From assembly GCF_006345805.1 (NCBI RefSeq), contig NW_021827538.1, positions 1 through 28,061 of the forward strand: 28,061 bases of DNA, in the 5' to 3' direction. Under the pieces are notes generated by a model. The model was not told where the DNA came from and ran no database searches. It saw only the letters and a program-made list of their open reading frames with translations. The stretch comes from Octopus sinensis (taxonomy: Eukaryota). How positions within the stretch are numbered: position 1 is the first letter of the stretch; each line of letters opens with the position of its first letter. The translations under genes were made by a program, and so were the position numbers. Below, piece after piece: positions 3,326-28,061 of this stretch.

Positions 3326-3389
<64 letters not shown>

Positions 3390-3394
3390 TGTGC

Positions 3395-3597
3395 ATCTGT
3401 GACTGTCCACCCTCACCATCGTTTGAGAAACAGTGTTGCTGTGTTTACTCCCTATAACTTGGCAGTTCAAAAAAAGACCAATAGAAAAACTACTAAGCTT
3501 ACAAAGAGTAAGGCCTGGGATCGATTTCTTCTACTAAAGGTGGTGCTCCAGCATGACCACATTGAAATTACTGAAACAAGTAAAGGAATAAGAGAAT
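3395..3597 (+). mobile_element. 3' part of a tRNA-derived SINE, diverged
   Basis: Homologous to the 3' halves of the SINEs at 8362-8710 and 22932-23320 (aaggtggtgctccagcatg...actgaaacaagtaaaggaata). Confidence 0.75.
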
Positions 3598-3932
3598 ACA
3601 TATACATATGTGCACACATACATATAAGTTAGTTCCTGGTAGATTATTTGCAGAGAAACCCAACCTGAGCTCTGGGCTGTTGGATTCCAGACCAATACCA
3701 AAATTCTTCAAGCATAAGAAATGCCGGTTTCACAACAGTAACACCATAGTTATGTTACTATCATACACAAACATGTATATATATATACATACATGTGTAT
3801 ATATAAACATGTGAGTGTGTATGTGTATATATATACACACATATATATATATATATACATACGTATATAAAAATAAGCATATCTATATATATGTGTGTAT
3901 TTATGAGAAGGTTGTATGTTATTTCAGGAAAA

Positions 3933-4260
3933 TTTCTTTATTATTTCTAACAAGACTATGGCTATGCTGGAGCACTGCCTTTAATTGAGGAAATCGACCC
4001 AGGATTTTTTCTTTGTAAGCCTAGTACTTATTCTATCAGTCTCTTTTCCTAAACTGCTAAGCTATGGGGGACATATACACACAGACACATACATATATAT
4101 ACAATGGGCTTCTTTCAGTTTCCATCTACCAAATCTACTTACAAGGCTTTGGTTGGCCCCAGGCTATAGTAGAAGTCACTTGTGCAAGGTGCCACACAGT
4201 GGGACTGAACCCAGAGCCATGTGGTTGGTAAGCAATCTACTTACTACACAGCCGCTCCCA
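3933..4260 (-). mobile_element. tRNA-derived SINE
   Basis: The minus strand starts ggagcggctgtgtagtaag with B-box-like ggttcagtccc. Body and 3' end are shared with the other copies. Confidence 0.85.
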
Positions 4261-4369
4261 CACCTATACACACATAGAAATGTATATACACACAGACATG
4301 TACATATGTGTATATCCATCTATATATACATACATAAAGATGTATACACACACACACACACGAGGAGGC

Positions 4370-6800: not shown

Positions 6801-6853
6801 GATCTTTAGGTTTGTGAATCTGTGGTGTATATATATATATATATACACACACA

Positions 6854-7008
6854 CAGGAGTGGCTGTGTGGTAAGAAGCTTACTTCCCAACCACATAGTTC
6901 CGGGTTCAGTTCCACTGCGTGATACTTTGAGCAAGTGTTTACTATTATAGCCTCAGGCCAACCAAAGACTTGTGAGAGGATTTGGTAGATGGAAATGAAA
7001 GAAGCCCG
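6854..7008 (+). mobile_element. SINE 5' half (tRNA head), interrupted by an insertion
   Basis: caggagtggctgtgtggtaag (A box), ccgggttcagttcc (B box), body to gaaagaagcccgat. Confidence 0.85.
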
Positions 7009-7498
7009 ATATCATCATCATCATCATCATTGTTTAACGTCCGCTTTCCATGCTGTCATGGGTTGGACAATTTGAGTGAGGACTGGCGAACCAGATGGTT
7101 GCACCAGGCTCCAATCTCATCTGGCAGAGTTTCTATAGCTGGATGCCCTTCCTAATGCCAACCATTCCGAGAGTGTACTGGCTGCTTTTACGTTACACTG
7201 GCACAAGGGCCATCCAGGCGATACTGGCCACATCCACTCTCAAATGGTGCCTTTTACGTGCCACCTGTACAGGAGCCAGTCCAGTGGCACTGGCAACAAC
7301 CTCGCTCGAATCATTTTATGTGCCACCAGCACAAGTGCCAATGAGGCAATGCTGGTAATGATCACACTCAAATGGTGCTTTTCATGTGCCACCAGCATGG
7401 GAGCCAGACAGCTGCTCTGGCAATGATCACACTCGGATGGTGCTGTTAGCACTCCACTGGCACGGGTGCCAGTCATCGAATTTGGTTCAATTTCGATT
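7009..7498 (-). mobile_element. RTE-tail element nested in a SINE
   Basis: (ATC)n tail at the left, reverse complement of the RTE 3' end, about five internal ggtgc-tttt-gtgccac modules. Confidence 0.85.
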
Positions 7499-7499
7499 A

Positions 7500-7729
7500 T
7501 ATATATATATGTGTGTGTGTATATGTTTGTGTTTATGTTTGTCCCCCAGCTTTGCTTGACAACCGATTTTGGTGGGTTTGCGTCCCTGTATCTTAGCGAT
7601 TTGGCAAAAGAGACTGATAGAATAAGTATTGGGCAAAACAAAGAATAAGAACTGGGGTCCGTTTATATTTGACTACAGGCGGTGCTCCAGCATGGCTGCA
7701 GTCAATTGACTGAAACAAATAAAGGAATA
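7500..7729 (+). mobile_element. SINE 3' half, continuing 6854-7008
   Basis: TG-rich linker, then ttgacaaccga...ggcggtgctccagcatggctgcagtcaattgactgaaacaaataaaggaata. Confidence 0.8.
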
Positions 7730-7737
7730 CAATATAT

Positions 7738-7769
<32 letters not shown>

Positions 7770-8142
7770 CTAGCAGTATCGCCCGGCGTTGCTCGGCTTT
7801 GTAAGGGAAATAACTATAAAGCATTTTTAGAGAGTTATAGCAAAATAATGGAAAAAAATTTTGGTAAATTTATTATTTTTGAGAGTTAAAAAGGTGGAGT
7901 TGCGTCTCCTAGACAGTCTGTGGTTTGTGTTTCTGATTCTCGACCCCATGTCGAATTTATCGATTTTTTTCAGAACGGGGGAACTTTTCAAAATTTTCGC
8001 TGCGTTAGTTTTGAATTATGACATTGGGCTATGTGTGTCAAGTTTCATCAGAATAGGTTCAAAGCCGTGGTCAGGGTGAGGGTACAACCTAACAGACACA
8101 CAGAAACACACACAGACAAACTGCCATTTATATATAGAGAGA
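7770..8142 (-). mobile_element. Non-autonomous Helitron-like element
   Basis: The minus strand reads A|TCTCTCTATATATAAATGG at the 5' end. Its 3' end, ccgagcaacgccgggcgatactgCTAG|T, is nearly identical to the 3' end at ~2205-2273. Confidence 0.8.
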
Positions 8143-8290: not shown

Positions 8291-8361
8291 GAGAGACAAC
8301 GTAAAGGGGGAATGGTAATGTGGGAGGTGACAAGAATTAGAAGCAGTGGGGCAAGGGCACA

Positions 8362-8710
8362 AGAGTGGTTGTGTGGTAAGAAGCATGCTTGCCAACCACA
8401 TGGCTCTGGGTTCAGTCCCATTGCATGGCACATTGGGCAAATCAAAACCTTGTGAGTGGATCTGTTAGACGGAAACTGAAAGAAGCCCATCAGATATATT
8501 TATGTGTCTCTGCTTCTCCCACCAACAGAGCTTGACAACCAATATTGGTATGTTTACATCCCTGTAACTTAGCAATTTGGCTAAAGAGACCAATAGAATA
8601 AGTATTGTTCTTAGAAAGAATAAGTCCTGAGGTTGATTTGTTTGACTAAAGGCAGTGCTCCAGCATGGCCACACTCAAATGACTGAAGCAAGTACAAGAA
8701 TAAAGGAATA
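8362..8710 (+). mobile_element. tRNA-derived SINE, near full length with an internal deletion
   Basis: gagtggttgtgtggtaag A box, ctgggttcagtccc B box, shared body and 3' end. Confidence 0.85.
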
Positions 8711-8721
8711 CATATATATAC

Positions 8722-9054
8722 ACGTCGCCTTACTGGCACTTGTGCCTGGGCTAGTAGGGTGCTAAGAGCACCATCCAAGCGTGATCGTTGCCAGAGTGGT
8801 TAACTGGCTTCCGTGTCAGTGGAACGTAAAAGACACCATTCGAGCGAGGTCGTTGCCAGTACTGCCTGACTGGCATGTAAAATGCACCCACTACAGTCTC
8901 GGAGTGGTTGGCATTAGGAAGGGCATCCAGCTGTAGAAACTCTGCCAGATAAACATTGGAGCCTGAAGCAGCCATCTGGTTTGCCAGCCCTCAGTCAAAA
9001 TCGTCCAACCCATGCTAGCATGGAAGGCAGACGTTAAACGATGATGATGATGAT
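8722..9054 (+). mobile_element. RTE-tail element
   Basis: ggagtggttggcattaggaagggcatccagctgtagaaac...gacgttaaac followed by (GAT)n. Confidence 0.85.
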
Positions 9055-9083
9055 ACATAATATATATATATCTATATATATAT

Positions 9084-9134
9084 ACATCATCATCATCGTT
9101 TAGCGTCCGTTTTCCATGCTAGTATGGGTTGGAC

Positions 9135-9135
<1 letters not shown>
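9084..9135 (-). mobile_element. Very short RTE-tail copy, tail-to-tail with 8722-9054
   Basis: Reverse complement of 9002-9054 with a few mismatches. Confidence 0.8.
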
Positions 9136-9220: not shown

Positions 9221-10910
9221 AAGCAGTTCGGTTTTGTACCAGGTAGAAGCACCACTGATGCTATATTCCTGGTCCGACAACTGCAGGAGAAGTACCTAGC
9301 TAAAGATAAACCCCTCTACATAGCTTTGTAGACTTTGGAGAAAGCCTTTGACAGGGTTCCCCGTTCCCTTATCTGGTGGTCGATGCGGAAACTGGAGATT
9401 GAAGAATGGCTAATAAGGGCTGTACAGGCTCTATACAGAGAAGCTGTCAGCAAGGTTAGGATGGCAACGAATATAGTGAAGAATTCCGGGTAGAAGTAGG
9501 TGTGCACCAGGGCTCAGCCCTCAGTCCCCTTTTATTCATCATAGTCCTTCAGGCAATAACAGAGGAATTCAAAACGGGATGCCCCTGGGAGCTCCTCTAT
9601 GCCGATGACCTAGCTCTCATAGCAGAATCACTACCGGAACTAGAAGAGAAATTCGGGTGTGGAAGCAAGGGTTGGAATCAAAGGGCCTTAGAATAAATGT
9701 AGCAAAGACCAAAGTATTAGTAAGCAGCAAGAGGTACTCAGCACACATCCCTCGGGTAGGTGGCCCTGCTCAACCTGTAGGAAAGGTACAGGTAGAAACT
9801 CCATAAGATGCACCCAATGTAAGTTATGGACACATAAGAGGTGCAGCAACATTAAAGGGAAATTAACAGATAAGATAGCTTTCATGTGCGGCAGATGCAC
9901 AGGGACAATAGACACAACAGACACTCAGAAAACAGATTCCATCACACTCCAGGGAGAGAAACTAGAAGTAGTTGATAGTTTCCGCTACCTGGGTGACCAA
10001 GTTAGTAGCGGAGGTGGATGCACAGAGAGTATCACCACTAGAATACGAATAGCTGGGCAAAGTTCAGAAAGCTCCTACCCCTACTGGCAACAAAAGGTCT
10101 CTCCCTCAGAGCAAAAGGTAGATTGTATGATGCATGTGTGCGAACTGCCATGCTTCACGGTAATGAAACATGGGCTGTGACTGCAGAAGACATGCGTAGA
10201 CTTGAAAGAAATGAAGCTAGCATGATCCGCTGGATGTGTAGTGTCAGTGTGCACGCAAAACAGAGTGTAAGTATCTCTGAGAGAAATGCTGGATATAAGA
10301 AGCATCAGATGTGGTGTGCAAGAGCGACGCTTGCGATGGTATGGTCATGTGCTGCGGATGGATGAAGAGAGATGTGTGAAGAAGTGCCACTCCCAAACAG
10401 TTGAAGGTATCAGGGGGAGAGGTAGACCCAGGTAGACATGGGATGAGGTGGTCAAGCATGACCTCAGAGCATTGGGCCTCACTGAGGCAATGGCGAAGGA
10501 CCGAGATCTCTGGAGATATGCTGTGACTACAAAGACCCGGGCTGCTTTCTGCAGCAATTCCACATACCCCCTACCCATTCTAAGTACCCCGGATCCCCAA
10601 AGTACCCTGGATTCCCAAAGTACCCCGATCCCCAAAGTACCCCGGACCTCGTTGCCCCCGTGCCGTTGACACGTTAAAATGCTCGAACCGATCGTGACGA
10701 TGCCGGACCCTCCGGCCCCTGTGCAGGTGGCACGTAAAAAGCACCCAATCCACTCACGGAGTGGTTGGCGTTAGGAAGGGCATCCAGCCGTAGAAACTCT
10801 GCCAGATTCAGACTGGAGCCTGGAGCGGCCCCTGGCTTCCCAGACCCGGTCGAACCGTCCAACCCGTGCTAGCGCGGAAAGCGGACGTTAAACGATGATG
10901 ATGATGATGA
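9221..10910 (+). mobile_element. 5'-truncated, frameshifted RTE-clade non-LTR retrotransposon (RT, PHD finger, C-terminus, 3' UTR)
   Basis: Across frameshifts it translates as QFGFVPGRSTTDAIFLVRQLQEK, EKAFDRVP, VHQGSALSPLLF, LLYADDL (YADD catalytic motif), KTKV, LEVVDSFRYLG, MLHGNETW and RRLRWYGHV. It ends with a 3' UTR and (GAT)n. Confidence 0.92.
10582..10651 (+). repeat. 18-bp minisatellite (aagtaccccggatcccca), 4 copies, in the RTE 3' UTR
   Basis: Units start at 10582, 10600, 10618 and 10635. Confidence 0.9.
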
Positions 10911-11576: not shown

Positions 11577-11637
<61 letters not shown>

Positions 11638-11641
<4 letters not shown>

Positions 11642-12005
11642 TCATCATTATTTACCATCCGCTTTCAATGCTAGCATGGGTGGACGGTTCAACTGGGGTG
11701 TGGGAAACCAGAAGGCTGCACCAGGCCCAGTCTCATCTGGCAAAGTTTCTACAGCTGGATGTCCTTCGTAACACCAACCACTCCGTGAGTGTAGTGGGTG
11801 CTTTTTATGTGCCACCGGCACGGGGGCCAGGCGATGCTGGCAATGGCCATGATCGGATGGTGCTTTTTATGTGCTACCAGCACGAAGGCCAGTCGGGCGG
11901 CGCTGGCTACGGTCACGTTCAGATGGTTCTTTTACATACCACCGGCACTGGTATCACAACTACAATTTCCATTGATGTTGATTGACTTGGATTTTGATTT
12001 TGATT
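11638..12005 (-). mobile_element. RTE-tail element
   Basis: (ATC)n at the left, gctagcatgggtggacg, tttctacagctggatg, three ggtgctttttatgtgccac-type modules. Confidence 0.85.
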
Positions 12006-12620: not shown

Positions 12621-14288
12621 ATACATACATACAGACGTATGGATGTATAAATATACATATGTGCATCTTTCTTTGTCTATATATTATACACATTCATTCA
12701 TATATATGTGTATGTGTATATAAATACATCTACGATTAGATTAAAGTCTAATTATTATGAGGGGTTTTGTAGGTTTTTCTTCCCCAAAATAAACCAAGTA
12801 GAATGGCACAAATGAAACATAAACATTCATTCCAATTTAATTTTACAATAGAAATATTGGCAATTATCTGCTTTTCTCTTTATAAACTTTGTTGTCAACA
12901 ACAACAGCAATAACAACAACATATCCTTATCCAGCTTTTCTCCAAAATATGTTGTTTAGTCCATGTATATTCAAAGAGCTGACATCCTGAAGAAGGATGA
13001 TGATGATGGGTCACCAGAATATCATTAAACACCCCACCAATATTTCCTAATCCACCTCATGAAACCCCCAATACTTCATAATAAACTACACCAAGTTATA
13101 ACTCCTCACCTAACACAAAACAAAACACACTTCACCTGCCAAACCCCTTTTTCATACAAACACATCTTTCTCATTGCTACCCAAACATTGTCCCTTATAT
13201 TAAAGATAATTAAGATGAACCTACCTTTCATTAATTGGGCTTATTCATTAACCAATCTTTATGATCTCAACAGCAACAAATAATAACGATCCTCTCAACA
13301 TGCTGTCTATCAGTGTGATTATATGAAAGCCCATCTTTGGATAAGCTTTCCGAGTTAATCAATGTTGTGTATGATAATTGTGTGGATTATATTGAAATGT
13401 CGAGAGATTTACAGCATTTGTCAGGTTAAGAACAGTTTCATCTCCAGCTTTATTGGTATCTGTGAATCCAGGTAAATATGATAGAAACCAAGCCAACCAT
13501 GACTGTCACATCATTTCCAGTGCATATAATTATTAATAATACTCATATTCCTGATTTGTAGGGACGTGGTATTTCATTATGCAACCATAAATTCCTGTAA
13601 AATATATTAAATCGTTTTAGAAGTCAACACCACATTCTACTTTGTTAGCAGTGTTTTTCACATTATTCTATTGATATTCCATAGAAATTATAGTTGGCTC
13701 TGATTTTTTGCTAAAACCTTTCCTATCGAGATGTCAGATGTAAACAAACAATGAGATACACAATGAGAACAAACAACAGATGTTTTTCTCTTTGATCTCA
13801 TTGTTTGTTTCCGTCTGACATTTCGATATGAAATGTTGTAGCAGGAAATTAGTCCTGGCTATAATTTCTACCGATAATATCTGTAGAAATAACCTCAGCA
13901 AAATATTTATATTCCTTCTTACTACAAAACTTTTCACCATCACTTATATTCAGTCAATAAAGATAATGGTGTATTTATATCTTCAAGTTTTATTTCTAAT
14001 GATTATTCCATTGGAAACAGTTTAAATGTTTAACTTCACTGTCAAATAAACAATTTGTTTAATGTATTTAATGAAATGTGTGTTTTCCTTGAAATTCTTT
14101 GAATGAATCAAGTAAATATTATTTTATCAAAAGCTTTTCACAAAACTAATAAAGTTTCCATTTTATTTCAGCTTTCATGTAAAAATTAGTGAATTTTGAA
14201 GAGATAAATTGTATTCCAAAGGAAGAAAACAAAATCCACAGAAAAGAATATATTTAACAGAAAAAGATAATAATTCTATATTCATAAA

Positions 14289-16442
14289 ATGGAGATGATT
14301 AATGAAGAAAACAAAATGTTGGCTCTCATTCCTGCCACAGTCTGTGATACAACAGCAATTTATAAGGAAACTACACCAAATCTTCCCCAAATATTACACA
14401 CACAAAACACAAAGAAAACAGAAGAACAGGAAAGAAAAGACACAAAGAAATCTAAAGAACAGGAAAAGTCCATGTTACCAAGTTTCCTTCATATTGTGAC
14501 ATGTAACCGAACACTAATCAAAACAGACCACATCAATACGTTTATAGATTATGTAAAGGATAAATGTAATCACATGGACTCTCTGGGTTTAAATGGATCT
14601 CGAATTTTACGTAATATCAAACGTAAAATGCCAAGATTTCTGGAATTTGCAAAACAAAATAATGATTTTGTTCACCTAAACCTTGATTGGTTTCAACAAA
14701 GACTCTTTGACATTTATGTCACCTGTAACCCATACAACCACAAGACCATTGAACCACCAAAAGTAACCACAAAATTTCGTCCTCTTCGGCCAGTTGTGAC
14801 CAGAGAAGTAGAGATTGAGGAATCTGGTGAAGACTTAAGCAACCCAATATCCAATATTGTTGTCATACAAGGGGGTATTGTAACATATTCCCGCCACTTT
14901 ATGACAATATGTTGTATAACAAGAGACGGCAACAGAAACGATGTTCGTTGCTCATCTTCTGTCACTGATTTTACCAGAATCAGTGAAGACACAGTCCTCG
15001 CCACCCTGCCCTTCCGAAAAATGATTCTTATTATCAACCCTTTAAGTTTGAGAATCAAAAGAATTCAGCTAGGATTAATCTTGGTTTCTTATTTGGAACA
15101 TTCTACACTTATAGGTGTAGAAATGTTTGGTCGGACCATATACGTCATTGACTGGGAAGAGAATAGAATAAAATACGAATTCATAACGAAAGAAACCCCT
15201 TCAGATATTGCTGTAGGAGCACAAAATAAACTCTTAGTATCCTTTTCCAATATTAACAGGGTTACCTGTTACAATGTGGATGGTCAGCAGTTATTTGAGG
15301 TGGATACAAATTCCCTGGACATTCCAAGCCACATCTCTGTGTACCAAAACCATTTTTATGTCCTTCAGGGACATATTATTTATCGGATATCAGGTACAGG
15401 TGCTGTGACAACAAGAGAAATTGGCATGAAATGCCGCCATATTTCTGTTGGCAAAGAAAACATTTTTGTAACTGATTATTTTGATGTCCTTCATATCATT
15501 GGAACAAATGAAGACTTTTGGCCCAGGCAGTCACATAACCCCCAGCTATGGACCCCAACATTGAACAACTATATTTATATTGAGGATTGCTACAACATTA
15601 CAAATATTCTACCTATGTCTACATCTTCTATATTAATAATTTACAAAAACAAGAAAGCTAAATTATTCACTGATAACAGGGAAATAATTAACCAAAATAA
15701 TTCAGTTTTCCTTGAGCTTCCTTCTTTCTGTTGTAGAATAAACGCAAACAGATTCCTGGTATTTTATCATGAAATGAAAGGATTTCAGTATATCACCTGT
15801 CCTGAACTAAGAAAAGGCCCTTTAATAAAGGTGCAAACTGGTTACATGAAAATATGTCATATTGTATCAAATAAGTATTTAGCTGTGACCACCGATGAAA
15901 ACAAAAGCGAGGTCCAAATCCTCTTGATCAACGAAGATAAAGTTGACATTGCAGAAAGAATTTCTCTGGGACATCATAATGTCAGCATTGCTGCAACTCC
16001 AATTAATTTTGTAGTCGTAGATGGAAACGAAAATAAAATGGTATTTTATTCCACATGTGGTGAAGAACTTTTTCAAAAATACCTTCCATTCTATGGCTAC
16101 CCTCATCACATCTACTCTGATAATGTTTATTTCTATGTCCTCTTCAGGAGACACTCTATTCTCAGATGTTACGATCTATATGGACAAATGAAATGGCAGT
16201 GGGAACTGCCTTTCCCTGTTCACCCTCACATTGCTGTTTTCCAAGGAACTCTTTATGTCCCGGACACTCAACTCAACAGGGTTCTTCTTTACAAGTATCA
16301 AGTCCGGTCGTCTGGCTGTCTTTTACCCATTAAAAATCCTTATATCAGAAATCTAAATCTACGACTCAAAGAAAAGGAGAATGACCAAAAACTTGTCATT
16401 GGCGAAATATGTAATTTGTCCAATGGACAGTTGGTGGTCTGA
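14289..16442 (+). CDS. N-terminal part (717 aa) of a large intronless multi-beta-propeller (NHL-like) protein: short helical region plus ~2 propellers
   Basis: A 2.15-kb stop-free frame in AT-rich DNA. The ATG has A at -3 and G at +4, with a candidate acceptor ttttatttcAG at 14170-14171. Blade-like motifs recur (TPSDIAVGAQNKLLVS, CYNVDGQ, HPHIAVFQGTLYVPDTQLNRV). It ends at the frameshift mid-blade (QLVV*). Confidence 0.8.
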   Translation: MEMINEENKMLALIPATVCDTTAIYKETTPNLPQILHTQNTKKTEEQERKDTKKSKEQEKSMLPSFLHIVTCNRTLIKTDHINTFIDYVKDKCNHMDSLGLNGSRILRNIKRKMPRFLEFAKQNNDFVHLNLDWFQQRLFDIYVTCNPYNHKTIEPPKVTTKFRPLRPVVTREVEIEESGEDLSNPISNIVVIQGGIVTYSRHFMTICCITRDGNRNDVRCSSSVTDFTRISEDTVLATLPFRKMILIINPLSLRIKRIQLGLILVSYLEHSTLIGVEMFGRTIYVIDWEENRIKYEFITKETPSDIAVGAQNKLLVSFSNINRVTCYNVDGQQLFEVDTNSLDIPSHISVYQNHFYVLQGHIIYRISGTGAVTTREIGMKCRHISVGKENIFVTDYFDVLHIIGTNEDFWPRQSHNPQLWTPTLNNYIYIEDCYNITNILPMSTSSILIIYKNKKAKLFTDNREIINQNNSVFLELPSFCCRINANRFLVFYHEMKGFQYITCPELRKGPLIKVQTGYMKICHIVSNKYLAVTTDENKSEVQILLINEDKVDIAERISLGHHNVSIAATPINFVVVDGNENKMVFYSTCGEELFQKYLPFYGYPHHIYSDNVYFYVLFRRHSILRCYDLYGQMKWQWELPFPVHPHIAVFQGTLYVPDTQLNRVLLYKYQVRSSGCLLPIKNPYIRNLNLRLKEKENDQKLVIGEICNLSNGQLVV

Positions 16443-19400
16443 CATCAACCATGATTGCTTGTTGTACATTTCTGAGGAAGGAGACATTGTGTCCAGATTA
16501 TCTCTGCCGTCTACAGCCACAGATATATGTCGATGGGATTCTAATCATATAGGGGTCACATTACCCCTACAGAAACAATTAAGGGTCATCGGAAACCTAT
16601 CAAAGACAGTGAGAAGTGTATCATTAAGGCAGCCTTATGTACGGGTGTGTAAGATGGGTGAATGTGAAATTGTTTGTTATTGTGATAAACCATCACATTT
16701 AGACATTTTAGCCATCAATTATTATAATCAAGTCGAAGTAATTAAGACAATTAATATCCCTGTGTTTGTGAAATCATTATCAATAGACAAGAAAACAGAA
16801 AAGCTATTAATTGTTACTAGGGGAAAAGCTTTTCAGTACAACACTAGAATAGGTGGTGGTGGTCATGGCAGTGCACGTCGTCAGAGTGGTGGAAGTGATG
16901 GTAGTATTAGTAGTGGTGATGGTAGTATTAGTAGTAGAGATGGTAGTATTAGTAGTAATGATGGTAGTATTAGTAGTAGAGATGGTAGTATTAAGTCTAA
17001 AATAAAAGCTTTCTTCACGCTCTTTTGTTGTGGTGGTCATCGTCGTCCTCTTCCTGGTGATGGTCATCATCGTCCTCTTCGTGGTGGTGGTCATCATCAT
17101 CGTCGTCTTCATGGTGGTAAAACTAGATATCGTTATGTTAGTAAAACTAAGATGGTCCCCAGTGTTTTAATGTCCCAAGTGAAACGTCCCCTCAGTCTCC
17201 AAGGTGGATCTATTGACCAAACGTCTGTTTATCTGATAGACAGAAGCCGTATGTTTGCCATAAACGATCAGAATTTGTTGGTTAATGATCTCGTTACTAA
17301 TAATCAACTTAATTATTATATCGACCTGGTGGATGTATTTTCCAGACACATTTCTCTCAGTGAAATGTTGTCTTCCACTTTATATCTACAGGACCTCACA
17401 GTTTCTGATAAAGCCAGACATATTCCTCTCCCTAAACATTTGGGAGACAAAGAACCAGCGTGGATTAAACGTTTGGTTCTTTCTGAAAATAATCTGATTG
17501 CAGGATTTGACAGGAATAATGGAAACATTAAGATATTCACATTGGATGGTCACCTTATGGATTCAATCAAAGTGAATGTTTATAATTATATTAAAATGTG
17601 TCGATGGCAGTCAAACACACTGGTCATTATGACTGGGGATCTTTCTAATAATAAATACCAACTGTTGACATTAAAAGTGGAATTTCCATTGTCGTTGGTA
17701 AATTACAAAACGAGAAATAATTATAAATGTGTGGCTTCTTTATCAAATAATCAACTGGTTTTGAGTGAATGGAGATATGGAAGACATTTGCATTTTGTTG
17801 ATATTGATGAAATACATTCGAGTGTGAAGGAAACAAACAAAATAGACATACCTGAACCATTATTAACGGGAGACAAATATGGAAATAATTATTCTTATGA
17901 CATCCAGGATATTAAAGTTACTGATGAAGATGTCATCATTGTCTTCAACTTGAGATTCATCATTTTCTTCAACAGTGGTGGTCAATATTTACATTCAGTC
18001 AGACACTACATGAAGTATTATTCTGGTGGTGATGACAGGATGACAATTGATGACAGTTTTTTGTACATTTATGGTCATTGGGAGAAATATTTAGGTTCAT
18101 CTGGATATCGAAACATTTTGTGTTTGACCCAGAATGGGGAATACAAGAGAATATTTTTAAATAAAAGAATTTATAAAGATGAAGTACAATTCTCCAGTAT
18201 AGACTGTAAAGGACCAAGGTTTGTTGGAAGCTCCAGGAAGGGAATGAGATGGAAGGAATTGTATGTTGAAGGGTTGTTTATGGTGAATCGAGACAGCTTC
18301 CCGGTTGCTCGTTTACAAACAGACGAATGTCCTGTTCAAGTAAAAGATTTTGATGTCTCTGAGGAAGGAAAGACAGTTGTGTGTGAAAAAGCCAATAATG
18401 GAAATGTTAAAATATTCGATGAAGACGGCCAGTTGCTATGTCACAGAAATGTTGCAAGTTTAGTTGGTGGTGTGTGTTTTACACAAGAATCACACATAAT
18501 GGCCACGGTTCCTAAAAGGAAAGAAATATTTCAACTGAATGGAGAAGATTTGCAGACATCTCAAGTTTGGTCGAGTCTCATCCCTTATGGTGTAATATGG
18601 AGAAAAGTGGTGGGTATTTACTGGTGTGTACATAATGAATTGATTGAATGTCATTGCATAAAGATTGATGGGGACCAAGTGAACATTCTGGAATCTGTGT
18701 CGTCATTAAATCTTGATTCTGGTCTTCGTTTCCCTTCCATTACATCTGAAACGAACAAGGAAATATTCAGTAATGAATTAATTAGTAAATTGGAATACAG
18801 AGGAGGAGATGGAGATGGAGGAGGAAGAAGAAGAGGTAAATCAGGTGAAATAATTGGTAAAGGTAGATTAAAGGTGATATGTGGTAATTACATAGCGGAG
18901 ATTAATAATTCAGGAATTGATGAAATATCAGTGAGGAGATTTCCATATAGGACAGCAATGGTCCCTTTTTCCATTCCTGCATTCGAGGAACCTCTTGATT
19001 ATAATCGGAGGGACATTAGGGACCAGAACAGTAAACTAATTAAGTTAGATGAGAATGTGAGTGTGTTGATGTTTCAAGAAAGTGTCACATTAATCAGAAC
19101 AACAACAACAGTGGACATACTTCAACATGAACAACAACAACGACCACCACTGGACATATGTCGGTGGACAGAGGAATGTTTCATTGTCGCCTTTGGGAGA
19201 GAAATGAGGGTCTTCAACAGGGATCTCCGTCGTTTAAAAACCATCAGAACTGAGAAATACTACAACAGGATTTATAAATACAACGACAATCAACTCGTGT
19301 GTGGTGGTCATTATATTAGAGACATAACTCAAGAAGAGAGACACAAGAAATACAAAAGAATATGGGAGAACAACAAGGATTACTATTATTGCAAAGACCC

Positions 19401-19962
19401 CGACATCTTTGACCCTTATTATGTGGATGTGGTTGATATCAAAGATGGGAAATGTAAAGATGAAGTGTGTCGTGGGAAGACGGGGAGATATGGAAGGTTG
19501 GAGGGAGATGGAGGGGTGTTGGATGGTGTGGGAGTCACATCTTTTGGTGATGTTGTTGTTGTGAGGAGGGAGATGAAGAAGGAGTCTGTAATTTGGGAAC
19601 TTTTTTGTTTTGTGGAATGGTTCAGGGAAAAGTCTTTGGTGAGGAGGATAAGAATAGAAGGAGGAATGCTTTATGCTCCGGAATATTATATTCCAAAACC
19701 TCGTCTGACCATAATTGGTGAATGTGTTTATATAACAGATTTAAGAAACAATATTTACGAAATACCTCGACATATTGAAGAGGAAACATCTGAAGATGAT
19801 GAAATCCTGGAATTAGAAGATAATCCAAAATATTTACTCCTCAGAGAGGATGATAATGAAGTCTATGAAGTTCTTGGTTTGGATGTTTCAGACAATTCTT
19901 TGATGGTTTTTGGAATTATTCCTGGACGTCAATCTTTTGCTTTCTTTTATTTTGACAAATAA
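16381..19962 (+). CDS. C-terminal part (1193-aa ORF, homologous frame from 16438) of the same multi-propeller protein, ~4 propellers
   Basis: A 3.58-kb stop-free frame with repeated DICRW/KMCRW blades, IKIFTLDG and VKIFDEDG motifs. It is homologous to the paralog at 26716-28061. The first 19 codons are an off-frame reading of the upstream ORF's tail. Confidence 0.85.
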   Translation: MTKNLSLAKYVICPMDSWWSDINHDCLLYISEEGDIVSRLSLPSTATDICRWDSNHIGVTLPLQKQLRVIGNLSKTVRSVSLRQPYVRVCKMGECEIVCYCDKPSHLDILAINYYNQVEVIKTINIPVFVKSLSIDKKTEKLLIVTRGKAFQYNTRIGGGGHGSARRQSGGSDGSISSGDGSISSRDGSISSNDGSISSRDGSIKSKIKAFFTLFCCGGHRRPLPGDGHHRPLRGGGHHHRRLHGGKTRYRYVSKTKMVPSVLMSQVKRPLSLQGGSIDQTSVYLIDRSRMFAINDQNLLVNDLVTNNQLNYYIDLVDVFSRHISLSEMLSSTLYLQDLTVSDKARHIPLPKHLGDKEPAWIKRLVLSENNLIAGFDRNNGNIKIFTLDGHLMDSIKVNVYNYIKMCRWQSNTLVIMTGDLSNNKYQLLTLKVEFPLSLVNYKTRNNYKCVASLSNNQLVLSEWRYGRHLHFVDIDEIHSSVKETNKIDIPEPLLTGDKYGNNYSYDIQDIKVTDEDVIIVFNLRFIIFFNSGGQYLHSVRHYMKYYSGGDDRMTIDDSFLYIYGHWEKYLGSSGYRNILCLTQNGEYKRIFLNKRIYKDEVQFSSIDCKGPRFVGSSRKGMRWKELYVEGLFMVNRDSFPVARLQTDECPVQVKDFDVSEEGKTVVCEKANNGNVKIFDEDGQLLCHRNVASLVGGVCFTQESHIMATVPKRKEIFQLNGEDLQTSQVWSSLIPYGVIWRKVVGIYWCVHNELIECHCIKIDGDQVNILESVSSLNLDSGLRFPSITSETNKEIFSNELISKLEYRGGDGDGGGRRRGKSGEIIGKGRLKVICGNYIAEINNSGIDEISVRRFPYRTAMVPFSIPAFEEPLDYNRRDIRDQNSKLIKLDENVSVLMFQESVTLIRTTTTVDILQHEQQQRPPLDICRWTEECFIVAFGREMRVFNRDLRRLKTIRTEKYYNRIYKYNDNQLVCGGHYIRDITQEERHKKYKRIWENNKDYYYCKDPDIFDPYYVDVVDIKDGKCKDEVCRGKTGRYGRLEGDGGVLDGVGVTSFGDVVVVRREMKKESVIWELFCFVEWFREKSLVRRIRIEGGMLYAPEYYIPKPRLTIIGECVYITDLRNNIYEIPRHIEEETSEDDEILELEDNPKYLLLREDDNEVYEVLGLDVSDNSLMVFGIIPGRQSFAFFYFDK
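16897..16992 (+). repeat. In-frame 21-bp coding minisatellite (DGSISSx), ~4.5 copies
   Basis: gatggtagtattagtagt(ggt/aga/aat/aga) at 16897, 16918, 16939 and 16960, partial at 16981. Confidence 0.95.
17032..17118 (+). repeat. Imperfect in-frame coding repeat, GG-H(H)-R(R)-PL, three units
   Basis: GGHRRPLP / GDGHHRPLR / GGGHHHRRLHGG, built from ggt, cat and cgt triplets. Confidence 0.85.
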
Positions 19963-20568: not shown

Positions 20569-20754
20569 AGCTTTGTGTGTGCGTGTGTGCAGTCTGCATC
20601 TGACAGTTTTTAACGTTTAATAAGAACAGATTGTTGTTGTTGTTGTTGTTGCAGTGACATTCCAACTGCACACACGCACAAACATTGCCTTTCGTCCTCG
20701 TAGGGTTGTTGTTGTTGTTGTTGTTGCTGTTGGGGGTTCATAAAAAAAGAGAAA

Positions 20755-21385
20755 GACACTTTAAGAAGCATTCAGTAAAAGCTTTCCCATAGCTGGTCAT
20801 TTTTCATGCTAGAAATAGAAACCACTTTATTTTTCATATAAAATTTGAAGGACACTTTAAGAAGCATTCATAAATAAAATTGACCTGTATATGGTCTCAT
20901 TTCATGCTAGAAAGAGCCACCTAAACCTTCACATTTTTGTTTCATCACAAATAAAAATGGAAGGACAATTTACAAAGCATCCATGTTAAATGTTGTCCTA
21001 TAGATGGCCTAACATGATGCTAGAAATAACAGCCAAATACTCTGAAATTTGTATCGTTTTTCATAAAAAAAGTGAAGGACACTTTAAGAAGCAACTCTAA
21101 AAATATTGTCCCGTGGCAGTTTAAGTGTAAAATATTATAAAAGTATGCATTTATGAGTTTTATGTGTTTAAAAAACATAGCAAAGACATGTGTGTATATG
21201 TAGGTATATACATGTGTATAAAGGTATTTTTGTGTACAAATGGGTATTTTTGAATGAAATTTGGTAGAGATAACTTTCAAACGATGTAGATTACGATTAA
21301 AAAGAAATTTGTTGGCAAAATGTTTTGTAAGGGTTCGAGGGAAAAAGTGTGTGATTTAAGGGAGATTTGGCTGTTGTTTCTAGCA
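20755..21385. repeat. Four diverged 96-114-bp tandem units plus a 21-bp inverted repeat pair
   Basis: gacactttaagaagca-type anchors at 20755, 20851, 20964 and 21078. tgctagaaataacagccaaat (21018-21038) is inverted at 21365-21385 with one mismatch. Confidence 0.75.
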
Positions 21386-21734
21386 CACCACCCTCCTTGT
21401 CTTCTTTTTTTTTCTCATTTTTTCCCTCAGAAACACATTTATGTTATAAAAAAATAAAAAGAATATTTTTAAAATCTCTGATTATTTTTAGCCCCACTTC
21501 CTGGCCCCCGATTCTTTCTCTTTATATAATTGTAAAATATTGGAGAGCCTGAGAAGATTCTTGCTGGGATTTATCCACAGGGATTTAAATAAGAGCTTTG
21601 TAAAAGAGGATTTCTTTTGAGAGCATCCTTTTCTCTTAGAAAATGAAAGTGGAAGTTTCATTAAAAATATCCATTCTCCTGGAAGTTCTGAGGAAACAAA
21701 GTCCATGGGGTGTTCATCTGTAGTTAAGCCACAG

Positions 21735-21777
<43 letters not shown>

Positions 21778-22238
21778 GTAGAAATGTAGGTGTGTATATA
21801 TATATTATATGTATGTGTGTTTGTGTATACATTTATTCATGTATATGTACAAGTTTAAAAAAGAAATATCAAAAGATGTTGGAATATTTGAGGTATTGGA
21901 TAATTTCAGACTCTATTGTATAGGATTGCCGATACATTTATATAGGAATATAAATATACATCATAATTATACCCACAGGAAAGCAGAATATTATACATAC
22001 ATACATATTCATATATAAACTCAGATATATATACACCTACAGATATATATATACATATAATTATACATTATTATACGTAACCTTCATGCACACACATAGA
22101 AAAGACGACGGGTAAATCCATCTGTGACAACCCATGCTTAAGGGTGTCTGGTGATATTTCTGGTCTGGTATCACACAAACCGCCCAGTCTGGAGTCTCTC
22201 TATAACTTCTGCCGCTTCCCGTTCAATTGTTTCTATCT

Positions 22239-22317
22239 GTTGCCTAGCAACGCTAATTTGAATGACAAAAAACGTGGAGAAAAAGGCGGGAAATTTAGAC
22301 AAAACTTTGTCTAAATT
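22239..22317. promoter_or_regulatory. Candidate promoter motif cluster: RFX X-box, CHR-like hexamer, E2F site, palindrome
   Basis: GTTGCCTAGCAAC at 22239-22251, TTTGAA at 22257-22262, GCGGGAAA at 22286-22293, and a 12-bp-arm inverted repeat at 22292-22317, in a locally CpG-richer patch. Confidence 0.45.
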
Positions 22318-22734
22318 ATTTATTTAAAATCAAAGAGACATTGTCAGCATTTTTATGAATTAAATAATGTAAAATGACATTAAAGTTCTCACAATTAAGT
22401 CATTAATTAGGAATTATAATTAATTTGGACGTGAAAAAGAAAGGAAAATTTCGATATGTATTTATGTATGTACATAAGCAGGTAAATATTTATATATGTA
22501 AGTATGTATGAATATTTACATACGTCTATAGAGAGAGAAAGGGGGAGAGAGAGGGTGGAGTATTACACATGTATACACATAAGACGAATGATGTCTGGGT
22601 GTGTATCAGTGTGTCTGTGTGTGTATATACACGCCTGTTTATGTTTGGGCGTGTGTGTGTATTTATGTGTGATGTTGTGTGTGTGTGTGTGTATCCGGGA
22701 ACGTCACTTTCTGCCTCTCTCTCTATTTCTGACT

Positions 22735-22739
22735 GTCTC

Positions 22740-22830
<91 letters not shown>
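22735..22830. repeat. (CTAT)n followed by (TA)n microsatellite
   Basis: Direct reading. Confidence 0.95.
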
Positions 22831-22835
<5 letters not shown>

Positions 22836-22892
22836 TGTTTGACTCTCTCCCCTATCTATCTAGCCATCTCTCTCTCTATTTGTCTATCTTTT

Positions 22893-22931
<39 letters not shown>

Positions 22932-23319
22932 TTTTTCTCTTTTACTTGTTTCAGTCATTTGGCTGCGGCCAAGCTGGAGCACCGCCTTTAATCGAGCAAC
23001 TCAATCCCGGGACTTTTTCTTTTGTAAGCCTAGTACTTATTCTATCGGTCTGTTTTGCCGAACCGCTAAGTAACGGGGACGTAAACATCGGTTGTCAAGC
23101 AATGCTAGGGGGACAAACACAGACACACACACACTCATATATATATATAAATATATACGACGGGCTTCTTTCAGTTTCCATCAAACAAATCCACTCACAG
23201 GGCTTTGGTCGGCCCGAGGCAATAGTAGAAGACACTTGCCCAAGATGCCACGCAGTGGGACTGAACCCGGAACCATTTGGTTGGTAAACAAGCTACTTAC
23301 CACACAGCCACTCCTGCGC

Positions 23320-23320
<1 letters not shown>
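22932..23320 (-). mobile_element. Near full-length tRNA-derived SINE
   Basis: The minus strand starts ggcgcaggagtggctgtgtggtaag, with B box ccgggttcagtccc, complete body and A-rich 3' end. Confidence 0.9.

Positions 23321-23321
<1 letters not shown>

Positions 23322-23367
<46 letters not shown>
23322..23367. repeat. (CA)n microsatellite
   Basis: Direct reading. Confidence 0.95.
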
Positions 23368-26570: not shown

Positions 26571-26715
26571 TATATATATATATATATATATATATATGTC
26601 TGTATTTAACTCTCTCACTTTGTCTTTATCTACAACAACCTCCACTCTGTACCAGTGTCTGAGGTTTGGTTGTTTATAGAAGTGGTATGTTTAACAAGGA
26701 GTGTTTCAGCCTGTG

Positions 26716-28061
26716 TTGGCAAAATATGTAATCTGTCCAATGGACAGTTGGTGGTGTCTGACATCAAGCATGATTGCTTGTTATACATTTCTCAGGAAGG
26801 AGACATTGTGTCCAGATTATCTCTGCCGTCTACAGCCACAGATATATGTTAGTGGGGTTCTAATCATATAGGGGTCACAGATGGTTGCCAGTGTTTTACA
26901 GTCCCAAATGAAACCTCCCCACAATTTCTATGGTGGATGTATAGATAAAAATGTTTGTTAGACAACATCCCTATGTTTGTTATAAATGATTACTATTTGG
27001 TGGTTAAGGATCTCGTTACAAATAATCAGCTTAATATTGACATGGCACATCTATTTTATAGAAACATCTGTGTCAGTGAAATGTTGTCTTCTAAATTCTA
27101 TCTACAGGATCTCCAGGTTTCCGAGACAAACAACCAGTGCAGATTTTTCGTTTGGTTATTACTGAAAACAACCTGATTGCAATATACGACAGGAAAAATA
27201 AAAAACATAAGAAATTCACATTTGATGGTCATCTCTTGGATTCTATCAAATTGAATGTCTCTGCCATCAATATGTGTCGATGGCAGTCAAACCCACTGGT
27301 TATTACAACTGGTGATGGTGACAACCAAATGTTGACATTAAAAGTTGAATTTCAATTGTCATTGGTGATTTAGCAGACAAGAAATAAATATCATTGTATT
27401 GCTTCTTTGTCGGATGGTCTACTAGTATATAATTGGGATGGAGATGAACGTACTTTGTATGTCATTGATTTTGATGAAATCCATTCGACTGTGAGTATAA
27501 TGAAGCAAATAGACATACTGAGACATTATTGATGAGAGGTGGTGAGGTTATTGATTATGTTGAAGGCATATGCAATATTACAGTGACTGTTAATGATGTC
27601 ATCCTCGTTAGCAACAACAAATTCATCAATTTCCTCAGTAGTGATGGTCAGTATTTACATTCAGTTAGACACTACATGAAGTATATCAGTATTCATAGCA
27701 ACATAACAGTTGATGAGAAAAGATATCATCTCTATGGTATATTTAACAACATAGTGTGTTTCACACAGACTGGTGACCACAGCAAAATATATTTAAATGA
27801 AAGAATTTGTGTATGTAAAGTGGGCTTTAGCTGTATAAACAGTAAAGGGCCGAGATTTATTGGAAGTCACAGAAATAAATTGTATGTTGAAGGTTTGTTT
27901 CAGCTTAATCGGGAGAGATTCCCTGTTTGTCGTTTACAAACAGACGACTGTCCTGTTCAAGTAAAAGATTTTGATGTCTCTGAGGAAGGAAAGACAGTCG
28001 TGTGTGAAAAAGCCAATAATGGAAATGTTAAAATATTTGATAGAGACGGGGAGTTGCTATG
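26716..28061 (+). pseudogene. Decayed tandem paralog of the multi-propeller gene (propellers 3-5 region), truncated by the window end
   Basis: Colinear with ~16398-18440. Lesions: TAG at 26850-26852, a 590-bp deletion (gene 16561-17150), a 37-bp deletion near 27124, a stop at 27371-27373, and a 1-bp deletion near 27520. Confidence 0.85.

What the first reader, a model, noticed from the sequence alone, without database searches (positions are those of the whole stretch)
16381..16442. One 2-bp deletion splits the gene and leaves a usable out-of-frame ATG
Seen: this copy reads ttg gtg gtc TGA c. The paralog at 26748-26762 reads ttg gtg gtg tct gac (LVVSD). Restoring 2 nt near 16437 joins 717 aa and 1174 aa into one frame. 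It is the only lesion in 5.67 kb, so it is recent, polymorphic or an assembly error. The shift brings ATG 16381 (A at -3) into frame with the C-terminal part. Inference: the allele could yield a 2-propeller and a 4-propeller product, i.e. gene fission near a domain boundary.
Basis: partly seen in the sequence, partly recalled or inferred. Interest (0 to 1): 0.7.

Follow-up and report, generated by a model that had tools for sequence, protein, structure and literature searches.

The report
Single frameshift in an octopus multi-propeller gene
One copy of a large, octopus-only, many-copy gene for a roughly 1,800-residue multi-propeller protein carries a single 2-base deletion that cuts its reading frame in two; this is most likely a very young dead allele or a sequencing-consensus error, not a gene splitting into two working genes.

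Summary
The window gene (14289-19962, one exon) reads TTGGTGGTCTGAC at 16431-16443. Eight other copies of this site read TTGGTGGTGTCTGAC or a point variant, and 47 family proteins read NGQLVV(S/L)D without a break. This is the only lesion: 717 codons, then 1174 codons in the +1 frame, both colinear with intact relatives of 1,783-1,903 aa.

The gene belongs to an uncharacterised family found only in octopods, with dozens of copies spread along one 29-Mb Octopus vulgaris chromosome. Many of those copies are broken.

The two-product "fission" reading is weakly supported:
- ATG 16381 comes from conserved Glu-Asn-Asp codons and is present in five of the six intact genes read.
- An ATG in that 27-codon stretch is expected by chance (P about 0.5).
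- 44 other ATGs lie upstream of it.
- The break falls inside the second β-strand of the third propeller, not between domains.

An O. bimaculoides copy that stops 46 residues earlier kept its N-terminal ORF under purifying selection while its C-terminal part decayed.

Single-indel split copies also occur in the ONT O. vulgaris and PacBio O. sinensis assemblies, so a consensus error remains a serious rival. Reads would decide.

The parts
14289..16442 (+). N-terminal reading frame of the gene (717 codons plus TGA). It holds a disordered/helical head, two six-bladed β-propeller-like domains, a conserved NPYIRNLN stretch, and the first strand and a half of the third propeller.
   Evidence: ORF list and translation. 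95-97% aa identity to residues 1-716/717 of the intact O. vulgaris proteins P0001, P0002, P0078 and P0082, and to 1-712 of P0083. AF2 model of P0060, which has the same numbering.
16431..16443 (+). Lesion site. It reads TTGGTGGTCTGAC, 2 nt shorter than every relative (GTGT reduced to GT after GGTG). This creates TGA at 16440-16442.
   Evidence: The frame switch is at 16439/16438 for all relatives.
16438..19962 (+). C-terminal reading frame (1174 codons plus stop), open and colinear with residues 717-1798 of intact relatives. It holds the rest of propeller 3, a variable low-complexity loop and further propeller-like domains.
   Evidence: AF2 model. Foldseek finds multi-propeller proteins.
16381..16383 (+). 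Out-of-frame ATG (A at -3), in frame with the C-terminal part. It arises from conserved GAG-AAT-GAC (E-N-D) codons. A second ATG lies at 16423-16425.
   Evidence: Present in five of the six intact genes read, L001-L005. Expected by chance (P about 0.54).
16894..17118 (+). In-frame minisatellites (21-nt and 27-nt units) that encode the Gly/Ser/His/Arg-rich loop. They are present in this copy and in P0001 and absent from P0002.
   Evidence: Tandem Repeats Finder. The blastn gap 16868/16890-17150 against L001. pLDDT below 50 in the AF2 model.
26710..28061 (+). The downstream 'paralog': a 5'-truncated, decayed pseudogene fragment of the same family that runs off the window. Its first 164 nt are 93% identical to the gene and the rest about 70%. 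It has at least two in-frame stops and several frame changes.
   Evidence: The same gene-plus-fragment arrangement occurs in L002, at 97.5% identity to this fragment.

Best explanation
The window holds one copy of an uncharacterised, octopod-restricted gene family. Family genes are single-exon and multi-copy, and encode proteins of about 1,800-1,900 aa: a helical head followed by five to six β-propeller-like domains.

This copy has a genuine, very young 2-nt deletion, a slip in GTGT within GGTGGTGT. The deletion puts a TGA after codon 717.

Consequence (inferred): a loss-of-function or truncation allele, buffered by many intact paralogs. If the gene is transcribed, ribosomes would stop at 16440-16442. 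At most they would yield the 717-aa N-terminal protein. The 3.5 kb that follows would behave as a long 3' UTR, which probably lowers mRNA stability. That step is an inference from general knowledge of nonsense-mediated decay in invertebrates.

The C-terminal frame is not expected to be translated, and if the allele persists it should decay. This is ordinary birth-and-death turnover in a gene family, not a functional fission.
For: The lesion is derived and unique to this copy:
- Eight other copies of the site at DNA level and 47 proteins read through it.

Family context:
- Hits come only from Octopus vulgaris, O. sinensis, O. bimaculoides and Argonauta hians. There are 64 hits, but only 21 clusters at 50% identity.
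- Six intact genes are single exons, located at 6.8-22.7 Mb of OX597841.1.
- Many annotated members are truncated or have internal gaps.
- Truly decayed copies exist: the window fragment, the L002 fragment, L009 and L010.

Recency:
- There are no other stops or frameshifts.
- Private substitutions at otherwise invariant columns number 0 in the N part and 7 in the C part, against 1-11 in the eight close intact paralogs.
- The high dN/dS of the C part (2.4 against P0002) is a family trait. Intact P0002 against P0001 gives 1.33, and the pooled ratio over 15 pairs reaches 1.4-7.3 in the same patches.

A 2-nt loss outside a homopolymer is not the typical long-read consensus error (general knowledge).

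Arguments against a C-terminal product:
- 44 upstream ATGs.
- The ATG is pre-existing and expected by chance.
- The break lies inside a β-strand.
- In L010 the C part decayed after an upstream stop.
Against: - No reads, population data or RNA data are available, so a consensus error cannot be excluded.
- A single lesion in an otherwise perfect 5.67-kb ORF is also exactly what an assembly error looks like.
- Three other single-indel split copies occur in long-read assemblies: L007 and L008 in O. vulgaris (ONT) and L011 in O. sinensis (PacBio). Each has open frames on both sides, and L011 has an intact ortholog that is 97-99.6% identical.
- The window's source assembly is unknown. None of its ORF variants is in the protein collection.
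Confidence: 0.47

Rival explanations
1. Consensus (assembly) error. The gene is intact in the animal, and the 2-nt gap is an artefact of long-read consensus in a region where short-read polishing is hampered by paralogs that are 93-98% identical.
For: - It is a single lesion, with no sign of relaxed constraint on either side.
- Sister loci in public long-read assemblies show the same pattern of one small indel in an otherwise open full-length ORF. L007 has G4 reduced to G3 at residue 464. L008 has TT reduced to T at residue 733/734. L011 in O. sinensis has an intact O. vulgaris ortholog, P0089.
- The O. vulgaris reference was built from 27x ONT R9.4.1 reads polished with 10x/Illumina reads using Hypo (PMC10700109).
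- In the Illumina-based O. bimaculoides assembly, the one truncated copy I examined is genuinely decayed rather than carrying a single lesion.
Against: - A 2-nt deletion at a two-unit GT repeat is less typical of ONT or PacBio consensus errors than 1-nt homopolymer errors (general knowledge).
- Polishing with mis-mapped paralog reads would restore the gap, not create it, because all paralogs carry the longer form.
- The window's sequencing technology is unknown.
Confidence: 0.36
2. Incipient truncation to a stand-alone N-terminal gene. The allele is real, and its 717-aa product (helical head plus two propellers) is made and retained, while the C-terminal part is dispensable and will decay.
For: - O. 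bimaculoides LOC106870252 (P0065, 683 aa, locus L010) ends at a TAG 46 residues upstream of this junction.
- Its N-terminal 674 codons have no stop and no frameshift. The C-terminal remainder has 7 frameshifting indels and 5 further stops. About 7 lesions would be expected in the N part, so P is about 7e-4.
- N-part dN/dS is 0.31, the same as intact-to-intact comparisons at 0.35-0.36.
- All codons lie in one exon (the intact paralogs are single-exon genes), so exon-junction-dependent decay should not apply (inference).
Against: - There is only one precedent. Gene conversion of its N part from intact paralogs could mimic selection, and mosaic copies are seen in this family.
- There are no expression data.
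- The window product would end with a dangling strand and a half of the next propeller.
Confidence: 0.1
3. True gene fission. Both an N-terminal protein and a C-terminal protein started at ATG 16381 (or 16423) are produced.
For: - The ATG has A at -3 and is in frame with 1174 intact codons.
- The break is within 17 residues of a low-confidence stretch between domains.
- The O. vulgaris annotation lists comparable half-genes as separate proteins.
Against: - 44 ATGs lie upstream in the same transcript.
- The ATG is present in five of the six intact genes read and is expected by chance.
- No conserved C-only gene was found. Truncated models have full-length cluster mates in sister species or other annotations.
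- The first blade of propeller 3 would be disrupted, and that domain is modelled poorly on its own.
- In L010 the C part decayed.
Confidence: 0.04
4. Bypass of the lesion at the RNA or ribosome level. One route is a +1 ribosomal shift at GUC-U-GAC, giving a full-length protein one residue shorter. The other is a cryptic 106-nt intron (GT 16411 to AG 16516) that restores the frame.
For: - UGA-C is a weak termination context, and a shift that skips the U of a UGA stop resembles the antizyme mechanism (general knowledge).
- The best-scoring frame-restoring GT/AG pair, itself only a modest match to the splice consensus, exists.
Against: - The 118 nt downstream fold less stably than their shuffles (z = +1.5).
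- The site is not conserved as a shift site, because every relative is in frame.
- The splice would delete about 35 codons of the most conserved blade.
- Intact paralogs are single-exon genes.
- A-to-I editing of the stop cannot help. The old frame hits a second TGA three codons later.
Confidence: 0.02

Closest known systems
Young or segregating frameshift pseudogenes in expanded lineage-specific gene families (birth-and-death evolution; for example segregating olfactory-receptor pseudogenes, from general knowledge)
   Same: There is one disabling indel in one of many near-identical paralogs. The neighbouring copies range from intact to heavily decayed.
   Different: The family is uncharacterised and much larger per gene (5.4-5.7 kb in a single exon). 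Whether the allele is fixed, polymorphic or an artefact is unknown.
Genes split by indel errors in long-read assemblies (a known annotation artefact, from general knowledge)
   Same: A single small indel separates two long open frames that together match an intact relative. This is also seen in L007, L008 and L011, where the halves are annotated as separate proteins.
   Different: Here the indel is 2 nt and is not in a homopolymer. The sequencing technology behind the window is unknown.
NHL-repeat β-propellers of TRIM-NHL proteins (TRIM71, Brat, TRIM2/3)
   Same: The family profile gives weak matches to NHL blades. One match lies at the junction blade itself, profile positions 719-750 against TRIM3 (E = 0.002-0.09). 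The blade motif resembles hydrophobic-V-S/A-D followed by D/N-x-x-hydrophobic-hydrophobic.
   Different: No Pfam NHL hit. No RING, B-box or coiled-coil domain. There are five to six tandem propellers instead of one. Foldseek finds only generic multi-propeller proteins such as IFT-A, LRP2/4, DDB1 and Utp21, with TM-scores of 0.30 or lower.
Antizyme-type +1 programmed frameshifting at a UGA codon
   Same: The local sequence GUC-UGA-C would restore the ancestral frame if the U were skipped (read directly from the sequence).
   Different: There is no conservation of the shift site and no downstream structure. The site arose by a recent deletion in one copy.

Membership tests
Octopod-specific ~1,800-aa multi-propeller family (e.g. 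O. vulgaris CAI9742836.1 = P0002; O. bimaculoides LOC106878473; Argonauta hians Ahia01_000013500) | Colinear homology over the whole length of full-length members | tested here: met
   N piece: 95-97% aa identity to residues 1-716/717 (1-712 in P0083). C piece: 83-98% per aligned block (88-92% overall) to residues 717-end of P0001, P0002, P0078, P0082 and P0083.
Octopod-specific ~1,800-aa multi-propeller family | Coding sequence in a single exon | tested here: met
   Six intact members have gene length equal to 3 x aa + 3. The window copy is colinear with them at DNA level across the whole CDS, apart from the low-complexity loop that L001 lacks.
Octopod-specific ~1,800-aa multi-propeller family | One uninterrupted reading frame through the NGQLVVSD blade motif | tested here: not met
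   The window copy shifts frame inside this motif. 47 family proteins read through it. The copy is therefore a disrupted member.
NHL-repeat / TRIM-NHL proteins | Significant match to the NHL repeat model (Pfam PF01436) or to solved NHL domains | tested here: not met
   No Pfam hit at E <= 1 except a sub-threshold DUF5711 match. Profile against PDB gives E = 0.002-0.09 with no stretch passing on its own.
NHL-repeat / TRIM-NHL proteins | N-terminal RING, B-box and coiled-coil | tested here: not met
   No such Pfam domains. The N-terminus is modelled as disordered plus short helices.
Functional gene fission (split gene pair) | Both halves independently expressed and maintained by selection | not testable with these tools
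   No RNA, ribosome or population data. Indirect evidence is negative for the C half: no conserved C-only gene, and the C part decayed in L010.
Programmed +1 ribosomal frameshift (antizyme type) | Shift site conserved among orthologs and paralogs | tested here: not met
   All eight other DNA copies and 47 proteins are in frame at this site.
Programmed +1 ribosomal frameshift (antizyme type) | Stimulatory RNA structure 3' of the shift site | tested here: not met
   Fold of 16443-16560 gives -22.4 kcal/mol against a shuffle mean of -27.3, z = +1.5. No Rfam match in the window.

The most novel reading that the evidence does not exclude
The allele is real and catches a multi-propeller gene in the act of splitting. 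The helical-head-plus-two-propeller module would be expressed alone; an apparently selected counterpart exists in O. bimaculoides LOC106870252. The C-terminal propellers carry the patches with dN/dS above 1. They would be expressed separately from an internal start at 16381 or 16423.
Probability: 0.04. Interest if true: 0.45.

Novelty: new member of a known kind. Interest (0 to 1): 0.18.

Why it matters
In itself it matters little. A single frameshift in one of dozens of paralogs is the expected debris of a fast-turnover gene family, or a consensus error.

It does have practical value as a warning. Public octopus annotations already list halves of such single-indel copies as separate 'hypothetical proteins': 465 + 1304 aa, 417 + 1028 aa, and 680 aa. 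That inflates gene counts and suggests fissions that may not exist.

The context is more interesting than the lesion:
- The family is undescribed, as far as my literature searches reach, and restricted to octopods.
- Its genes are intronless and spread along one small chromosome.
- The N-terminal half is under purifying selection, while patches in the C-terminal half have dN/dS well above 1.
- One truncated N-only derivative appears to be maintained in O. bimaculoides.

Tried and rejected
- **Pfam** on both pieces and on seven other window ORFs found nothing above threshold.
- **Rfam** on the whole window found nothing.
- **Exact-sequence look-ups** of eight ORF variants from the window, meant to identify the source assembly, found none in the collection. 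No fetched locus is the window; the best match is 98.4% nt.
- **Literature searches** by topic and by six LOC identifiers found nothing on this family.
- **Decay of the C part as the cause of its dN/dS of 2.4** was rejected. Intact paralogs show the same patches, and the window has no excess of private changes.
- **Stop-codon editing or readthrough as a rescue** was rejected. A second TGA follows three codons later in the old frame.
- **A +1 frameshift signal** was rejected. There is no downstream structure and no conservation.
- **A cryptic frame-restoring intron** is possible on paper but unsupported. It would also remove the most conserved blade.
- **A recurrent breakpoint near residues 702-716** was considered, because P0030, P0017, P0066 and the window fragment's 5' end all fall there. 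It was set aside because P0030 is an alternative model of a 1,763-aa gene and P0017 and P0066 look like predictor joins that skip part of the gene.
- **A transposable-element origin of the family** was considered. No TE domains were found, and the duplication units include at least 10 kb of flanking DNA, so duplication is segmental rather than retrotransposition.
Full report
**1. What is in the sequence**

The window is eukaryotic. It has low coding density and many microsatellites and interspersed repeats.

Two long ORFs abut on the + strand. ORF1 is 14289-16442 (717 aa, TGA at 16440-16442). A second frame is open from ATG 16381 to 19962.

The site reads TTGGTGGTCTGAC at 16431-16443. The downstream paralogous fragment reads TTGGTGGTGTCTGAC at 26748-26762.

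A DNA alignment compared the window gene with two intact Octopus vulgaris genes, the fragment downstream of one of them, and the window's own fragment. It shows a 2-nt gap in the window gene only.

Every relative aligned by tblastn ends its residue 716/717 at 16439 in one frame and resumes at 16438 in the +1 frame. No other frame change or internal stop occurs.

**2. What the gene is**

I searched the C-terminal piece alone against the large protein collection, with no read-through. It gave 64 hits, all from Octopus vulgaris, O. sinensis, O. bimaculoides and Argonauta hians, and all uncharacterised. Full-length members are 1,783-1,913 aa.

I searched the N-terminal piece against 1.8 billion cluster representatives. 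It found only 21 clusters, and full-length members match it with their N-terminal ~700 residues. The ancestral state is therefore one protein.

47 family proteins, Argonauta included, read through the motif ICxLxNGQLVV(S/L)D...DCLLYI without interruption.

Six intact O. vulgaris genes are single exons, with gene length equal to 3 x aa + 3. They lie at 6.8, 7.7, 9.1, 9.6, 10.3 and 22.7 Mb of the 29.19-Mb chromosome record OX597841.1. Protein accessions of family members on that record run from CAI9742755 to CAI9743161.

Duplication units include at least 10 kb of flanks. The window gene is a mosaic relative of these copies. It is 98.4% identical to L001 over 12998-16868 and about 93-95% identical downstream. 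No fetched locus is the window itself.

Pfam finds nothing above threshold. A family profile touches NHL blades of TRIM71, Brat and TRIM2/3 only weakly (E = 0.002-0.09).

AF2 models give the following architecture (24-sequence alignments; mean pLDDT 62-66, with the β-domains mostly 75-90):
- a disordered and helical head, residues 1-170;
- β-domain A, 189-405, about 24 strands;
- β-domain B, 424-669, about 24 strands;
- a low-confidence stretch, 671-701, which nevertheless contains the conserved NPYIRNLN motif;
- β-domain C starting at 704;
- a low-complexity loop encoded by minisatellites at 16894-17118;
- further β-domains at residues 327-755 and 834-1174 of the C-terminal piece.

Foldseek against the PDB returns generic multi-propeller proteins such as IFT-A, LRP2/LRP4, DDB1 and Utp21. 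'Two propellers upstream, three to four downstream' is a fair description.

**3. Where exactly the break falls**

Numbering in the P0060 model equals that of ORF1. Strand 1 of domain C is IGEICN (704-709). Strand 2 is LVVSD (715-719). ORF1 ends at V717.

The break is therefore near a boundary but inside the first blade of the third propeller.

A protein started at ATG 16381 would carry 19 out-of-frame residues in place of strand 1 and most of strand 2.

The first 132 residues of the C-terminal piece have pLDDT 27-44 when modelled without the preceding residues. The same region scores 73-85 in the model that spans the junction. This is suggestive only, because AF2 is not a stability test.

**4. 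The 'usable ATG'**

ATG 16381 has A at -3. It is the AATGA of the codons GAG-AAT-GAC (E-N-D). Five of the six intact genes read (L001-L005) carry the same GAGAATGA.

The new frame is open for only 27 codons before the junction. ATGs occur in that frame at 20 per 697 codons upstream, so 0.77 are expected and P(at least one) is about 0.54.

Forty-four ATGs lie between 14289 and 16380. A scanning ribosome on a full-length mRNA would not reach 16381, so an internal transcription start would be needed. Nothing here speaks for one.

**5. Age of the lesion**

Neither half shows decay. At alignment columns that are otherwise invariant among 11 full-length relatives, the window has 0 private changes in the N part and 7 in the C part. 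The eight close intact paralogs have 1-11 in the C part, and three more distant ones have 23-46.

The C part has dN/dS 2.4 against P0002, and the N part 0.47. This is a family trait, not decay. Intact P0002 against P0001 gives 0.38 for the N part and 1.33 for the C part. Pooled over 15 pairs of six intact genes, the ratio is:
- 0.30-0.44 for residues 200-400 and 500-800 (0.82 for 401-500);
- 1.4-1.65 for residues 900-1200;
- 1.7-7.3 for residues 1500-1800.

The lesion is therefore very recent, or it is not real.

**6. Real allele or consensus error?**

I fetched loci behind 'truncated' family models to see what lesions look like elsewhere.
- L009 (P0064) is truly decayed, with 10 stops.
- L007 (465 aa + 1304 aa models) has a single 1-nt deletion, G4 to G3, at residue 464. 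Its frames are otherwise open.
- L008 (417 aa + 1028 aa models) has a single 1-nt deletion, TT to T, at residue 733/734. Its frames are otherwise open.
- L011 in O. sinensis (680-aa model) is a single frame change with open frames on both sides. Its O. vulgaris counterpart P0089 is an intact 1,718-aa protein that is 97-99.6% identical.

The O. vulgaris reference was assembled from 27x ONT R9.4.1 reads and polished with linked Illumina reads (PMC10700109). Residual indels in multi-copy regions are plausible in such an assembly.

This pattern raises the prior for an artefact. Two points pull the other way. A 2-nt loss at a two-unit GT repeat is not the typical long-read error. And mis-mapped paralog reads would repair the gap, not create it.

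The window's source assembly could not be identified. I put a real allele at roughly 0.6, including the N-only variant, and an artefact at roughly 0.36.

**7. A natural precedent**

O. bimaculoides LOC106870252 (P0065, 683 aa; locus L010, from the Illumina-based assembly) ends at a TAG at codon 675 of the P0009 gene. This is just after β-domain B and 46 residues upstream of the window's break.

Downstream of that stop the family homology continues, but with 7 frameshifting indels and 5 more stops. The 674 upstream codons have only in-frame indels and no stop. About 7 lesions would be expected upstream under uniform decay, so P is about 7e-4.

Upstream dN/dS is 0.31, against 0.35-0.36 for intact pairs over the same codons.

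Either an N-only protein has been kept by selection, or gene conversion keeps refreshing the N part. In both cases the C-terminal part did not survive as a gene.

Other truncated models have full-length cluster mates in a sister species or in another annotation of the same species. No conserved C-only gene is in evidence.

**8. Bypass mechanisms considered**

- Skipping the U of GUC-UGA-C would restore the frame with one residue lost. But the 118 nt downstream fold less stably than shuffles (z = +1.5), and the site is not conserved as a shift site.
- The best-scoring frame-restoring GT/AG pair (GT 16411, AG 16516; 106 nt), itself only a modest match to the splice consensus, exists on paper. 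It would delete the conserved blade, and nothing supports it.
- Editing or readthrough of the TGA meets another TGA three codons on.

**9. The 'paralog'**

The fragment from 26710 to the window end is 5'-truncated and decayed. It is a mosaic: 93% identical to the gene over 164 nt, then about 70%.

It belongs to a duplicated gene-plus-fragment unit also seen in L002, at 97.5% identity.

It still reports the ancestral reading at the site correctly. The intact genes are better witnesses.

**10. Verdict**

The cautious half of the interpretation (recent, polymorphic or an error) is right. The fission-into-two-products half is not supported, apart from the possibility of a stand-alone N-terminal product.

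This is an ordinary event in an unusual, undescribed gene family. Interest in the lesion itself is low. The family context is recorded under 'noticed in passing'.

Noticed in passing
window 17100-19959 (C-terminal part of the gene); loci L001-L006, genes at 10001 to about 15400: Among six intact O. vulgaris paralogs, pooled pN/pS is 0.30-0.44 for residues 200-400 and 500-800. It rises to 1.4-1.65 for residues 900-1200 and to 1.7-7.3 for residues 1500-1800. The C-terminal propellers therefore contain hypervariable patches, which suggests diversifying selection. Pairs are not independent, and gene conversion was not modelled.
   Followed up: partly
L010 8001-13100 (O. bimaculoides CM046628.1, LOC106870252 / XP_014771757.1): An N-only 683-aa ORF of the family is kept open and under dN/dS 0.31. 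The C-terminal remainder behind its stop carries 7 frameshifting indels and 5 further stops. This may be a selectively maintained truncated derivative.
   Followed up: partly
L007 about 5908; L008 about 5845; L011 about 9953-9959: Three other family copies in long-read assemblies carry exactly one small indel and otherwise open full-length frames. Their halves are annotated as separate hypothetical proteins. They are likely consensus errors or very young alleles, and they inflate the family's gene count.
   Followed up: partly
O. vulgaris OX597841.1, 6.76-22.68 Mb (loci L001-L009): Family copies are spread over at least 16 Mb of one 29-Mb chromosome, with protein accessions from CAI9742755 to CAI9743161. 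A few members lie on other chromosomes. One divergent member (P0070/P0091, about 33% identity) is shared at 90% identity or more by three Octopus species on a chromosome of about 200 Mb, and may be the founder gene.
   Followed up: no
window 16894-17118: In-frame minisatellites of 21 nt (SDGSISS units) and 27-30 nt (GGHHRPLPG-like units) encode a disordered loop inside the third propeller. The loop is present in this copy and in P0001 but absent from P0002, so its length varies among paralogs.
   Followed up: partly
window 26716-26879 versus 26879-28061; L002 20137-20607 versus 20601-22950: The downstream pseudogene fragments are mosaics. A short 5' patch is 93-96% identical to functional genes and is joined to old sequence at about 50-70% identity. 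This suggests gene conversion or recombination among copies.
   Followed up: partly
window 71-374, 7011-7297, 8763-9135, 10652-10910, 11606-11951; also 3360-4330, 6852-7008, 7497-7770, 8356-8722, 22896-23354: There are two families of interspersed repeats, about 300 bp and about 400-900 bp, in both orientations and 70-87% identical. They are also present in the paralogous loci. ORFs inside them have no Pfam match.
   Followed up: no
P0007 (2053 aa), L002 19390-22767, P0059, P0074: Some annotated models fuse family segments to C2H2 zinc fingers, or to ankyrin or 'MIB2-like' sequence. They may be chimeric gene predictions across neighbouring genes and pseudogene fragments.
   Followed up: no
window 14155-14171: A polypyrimidine-AG (ccattttatttcag) lies about 118 nt upstream of the start codon and could be the acceptor of a 5'-UTR intron. 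In that case the whole coding sequence would sit in the last exon.
   Followed up: no
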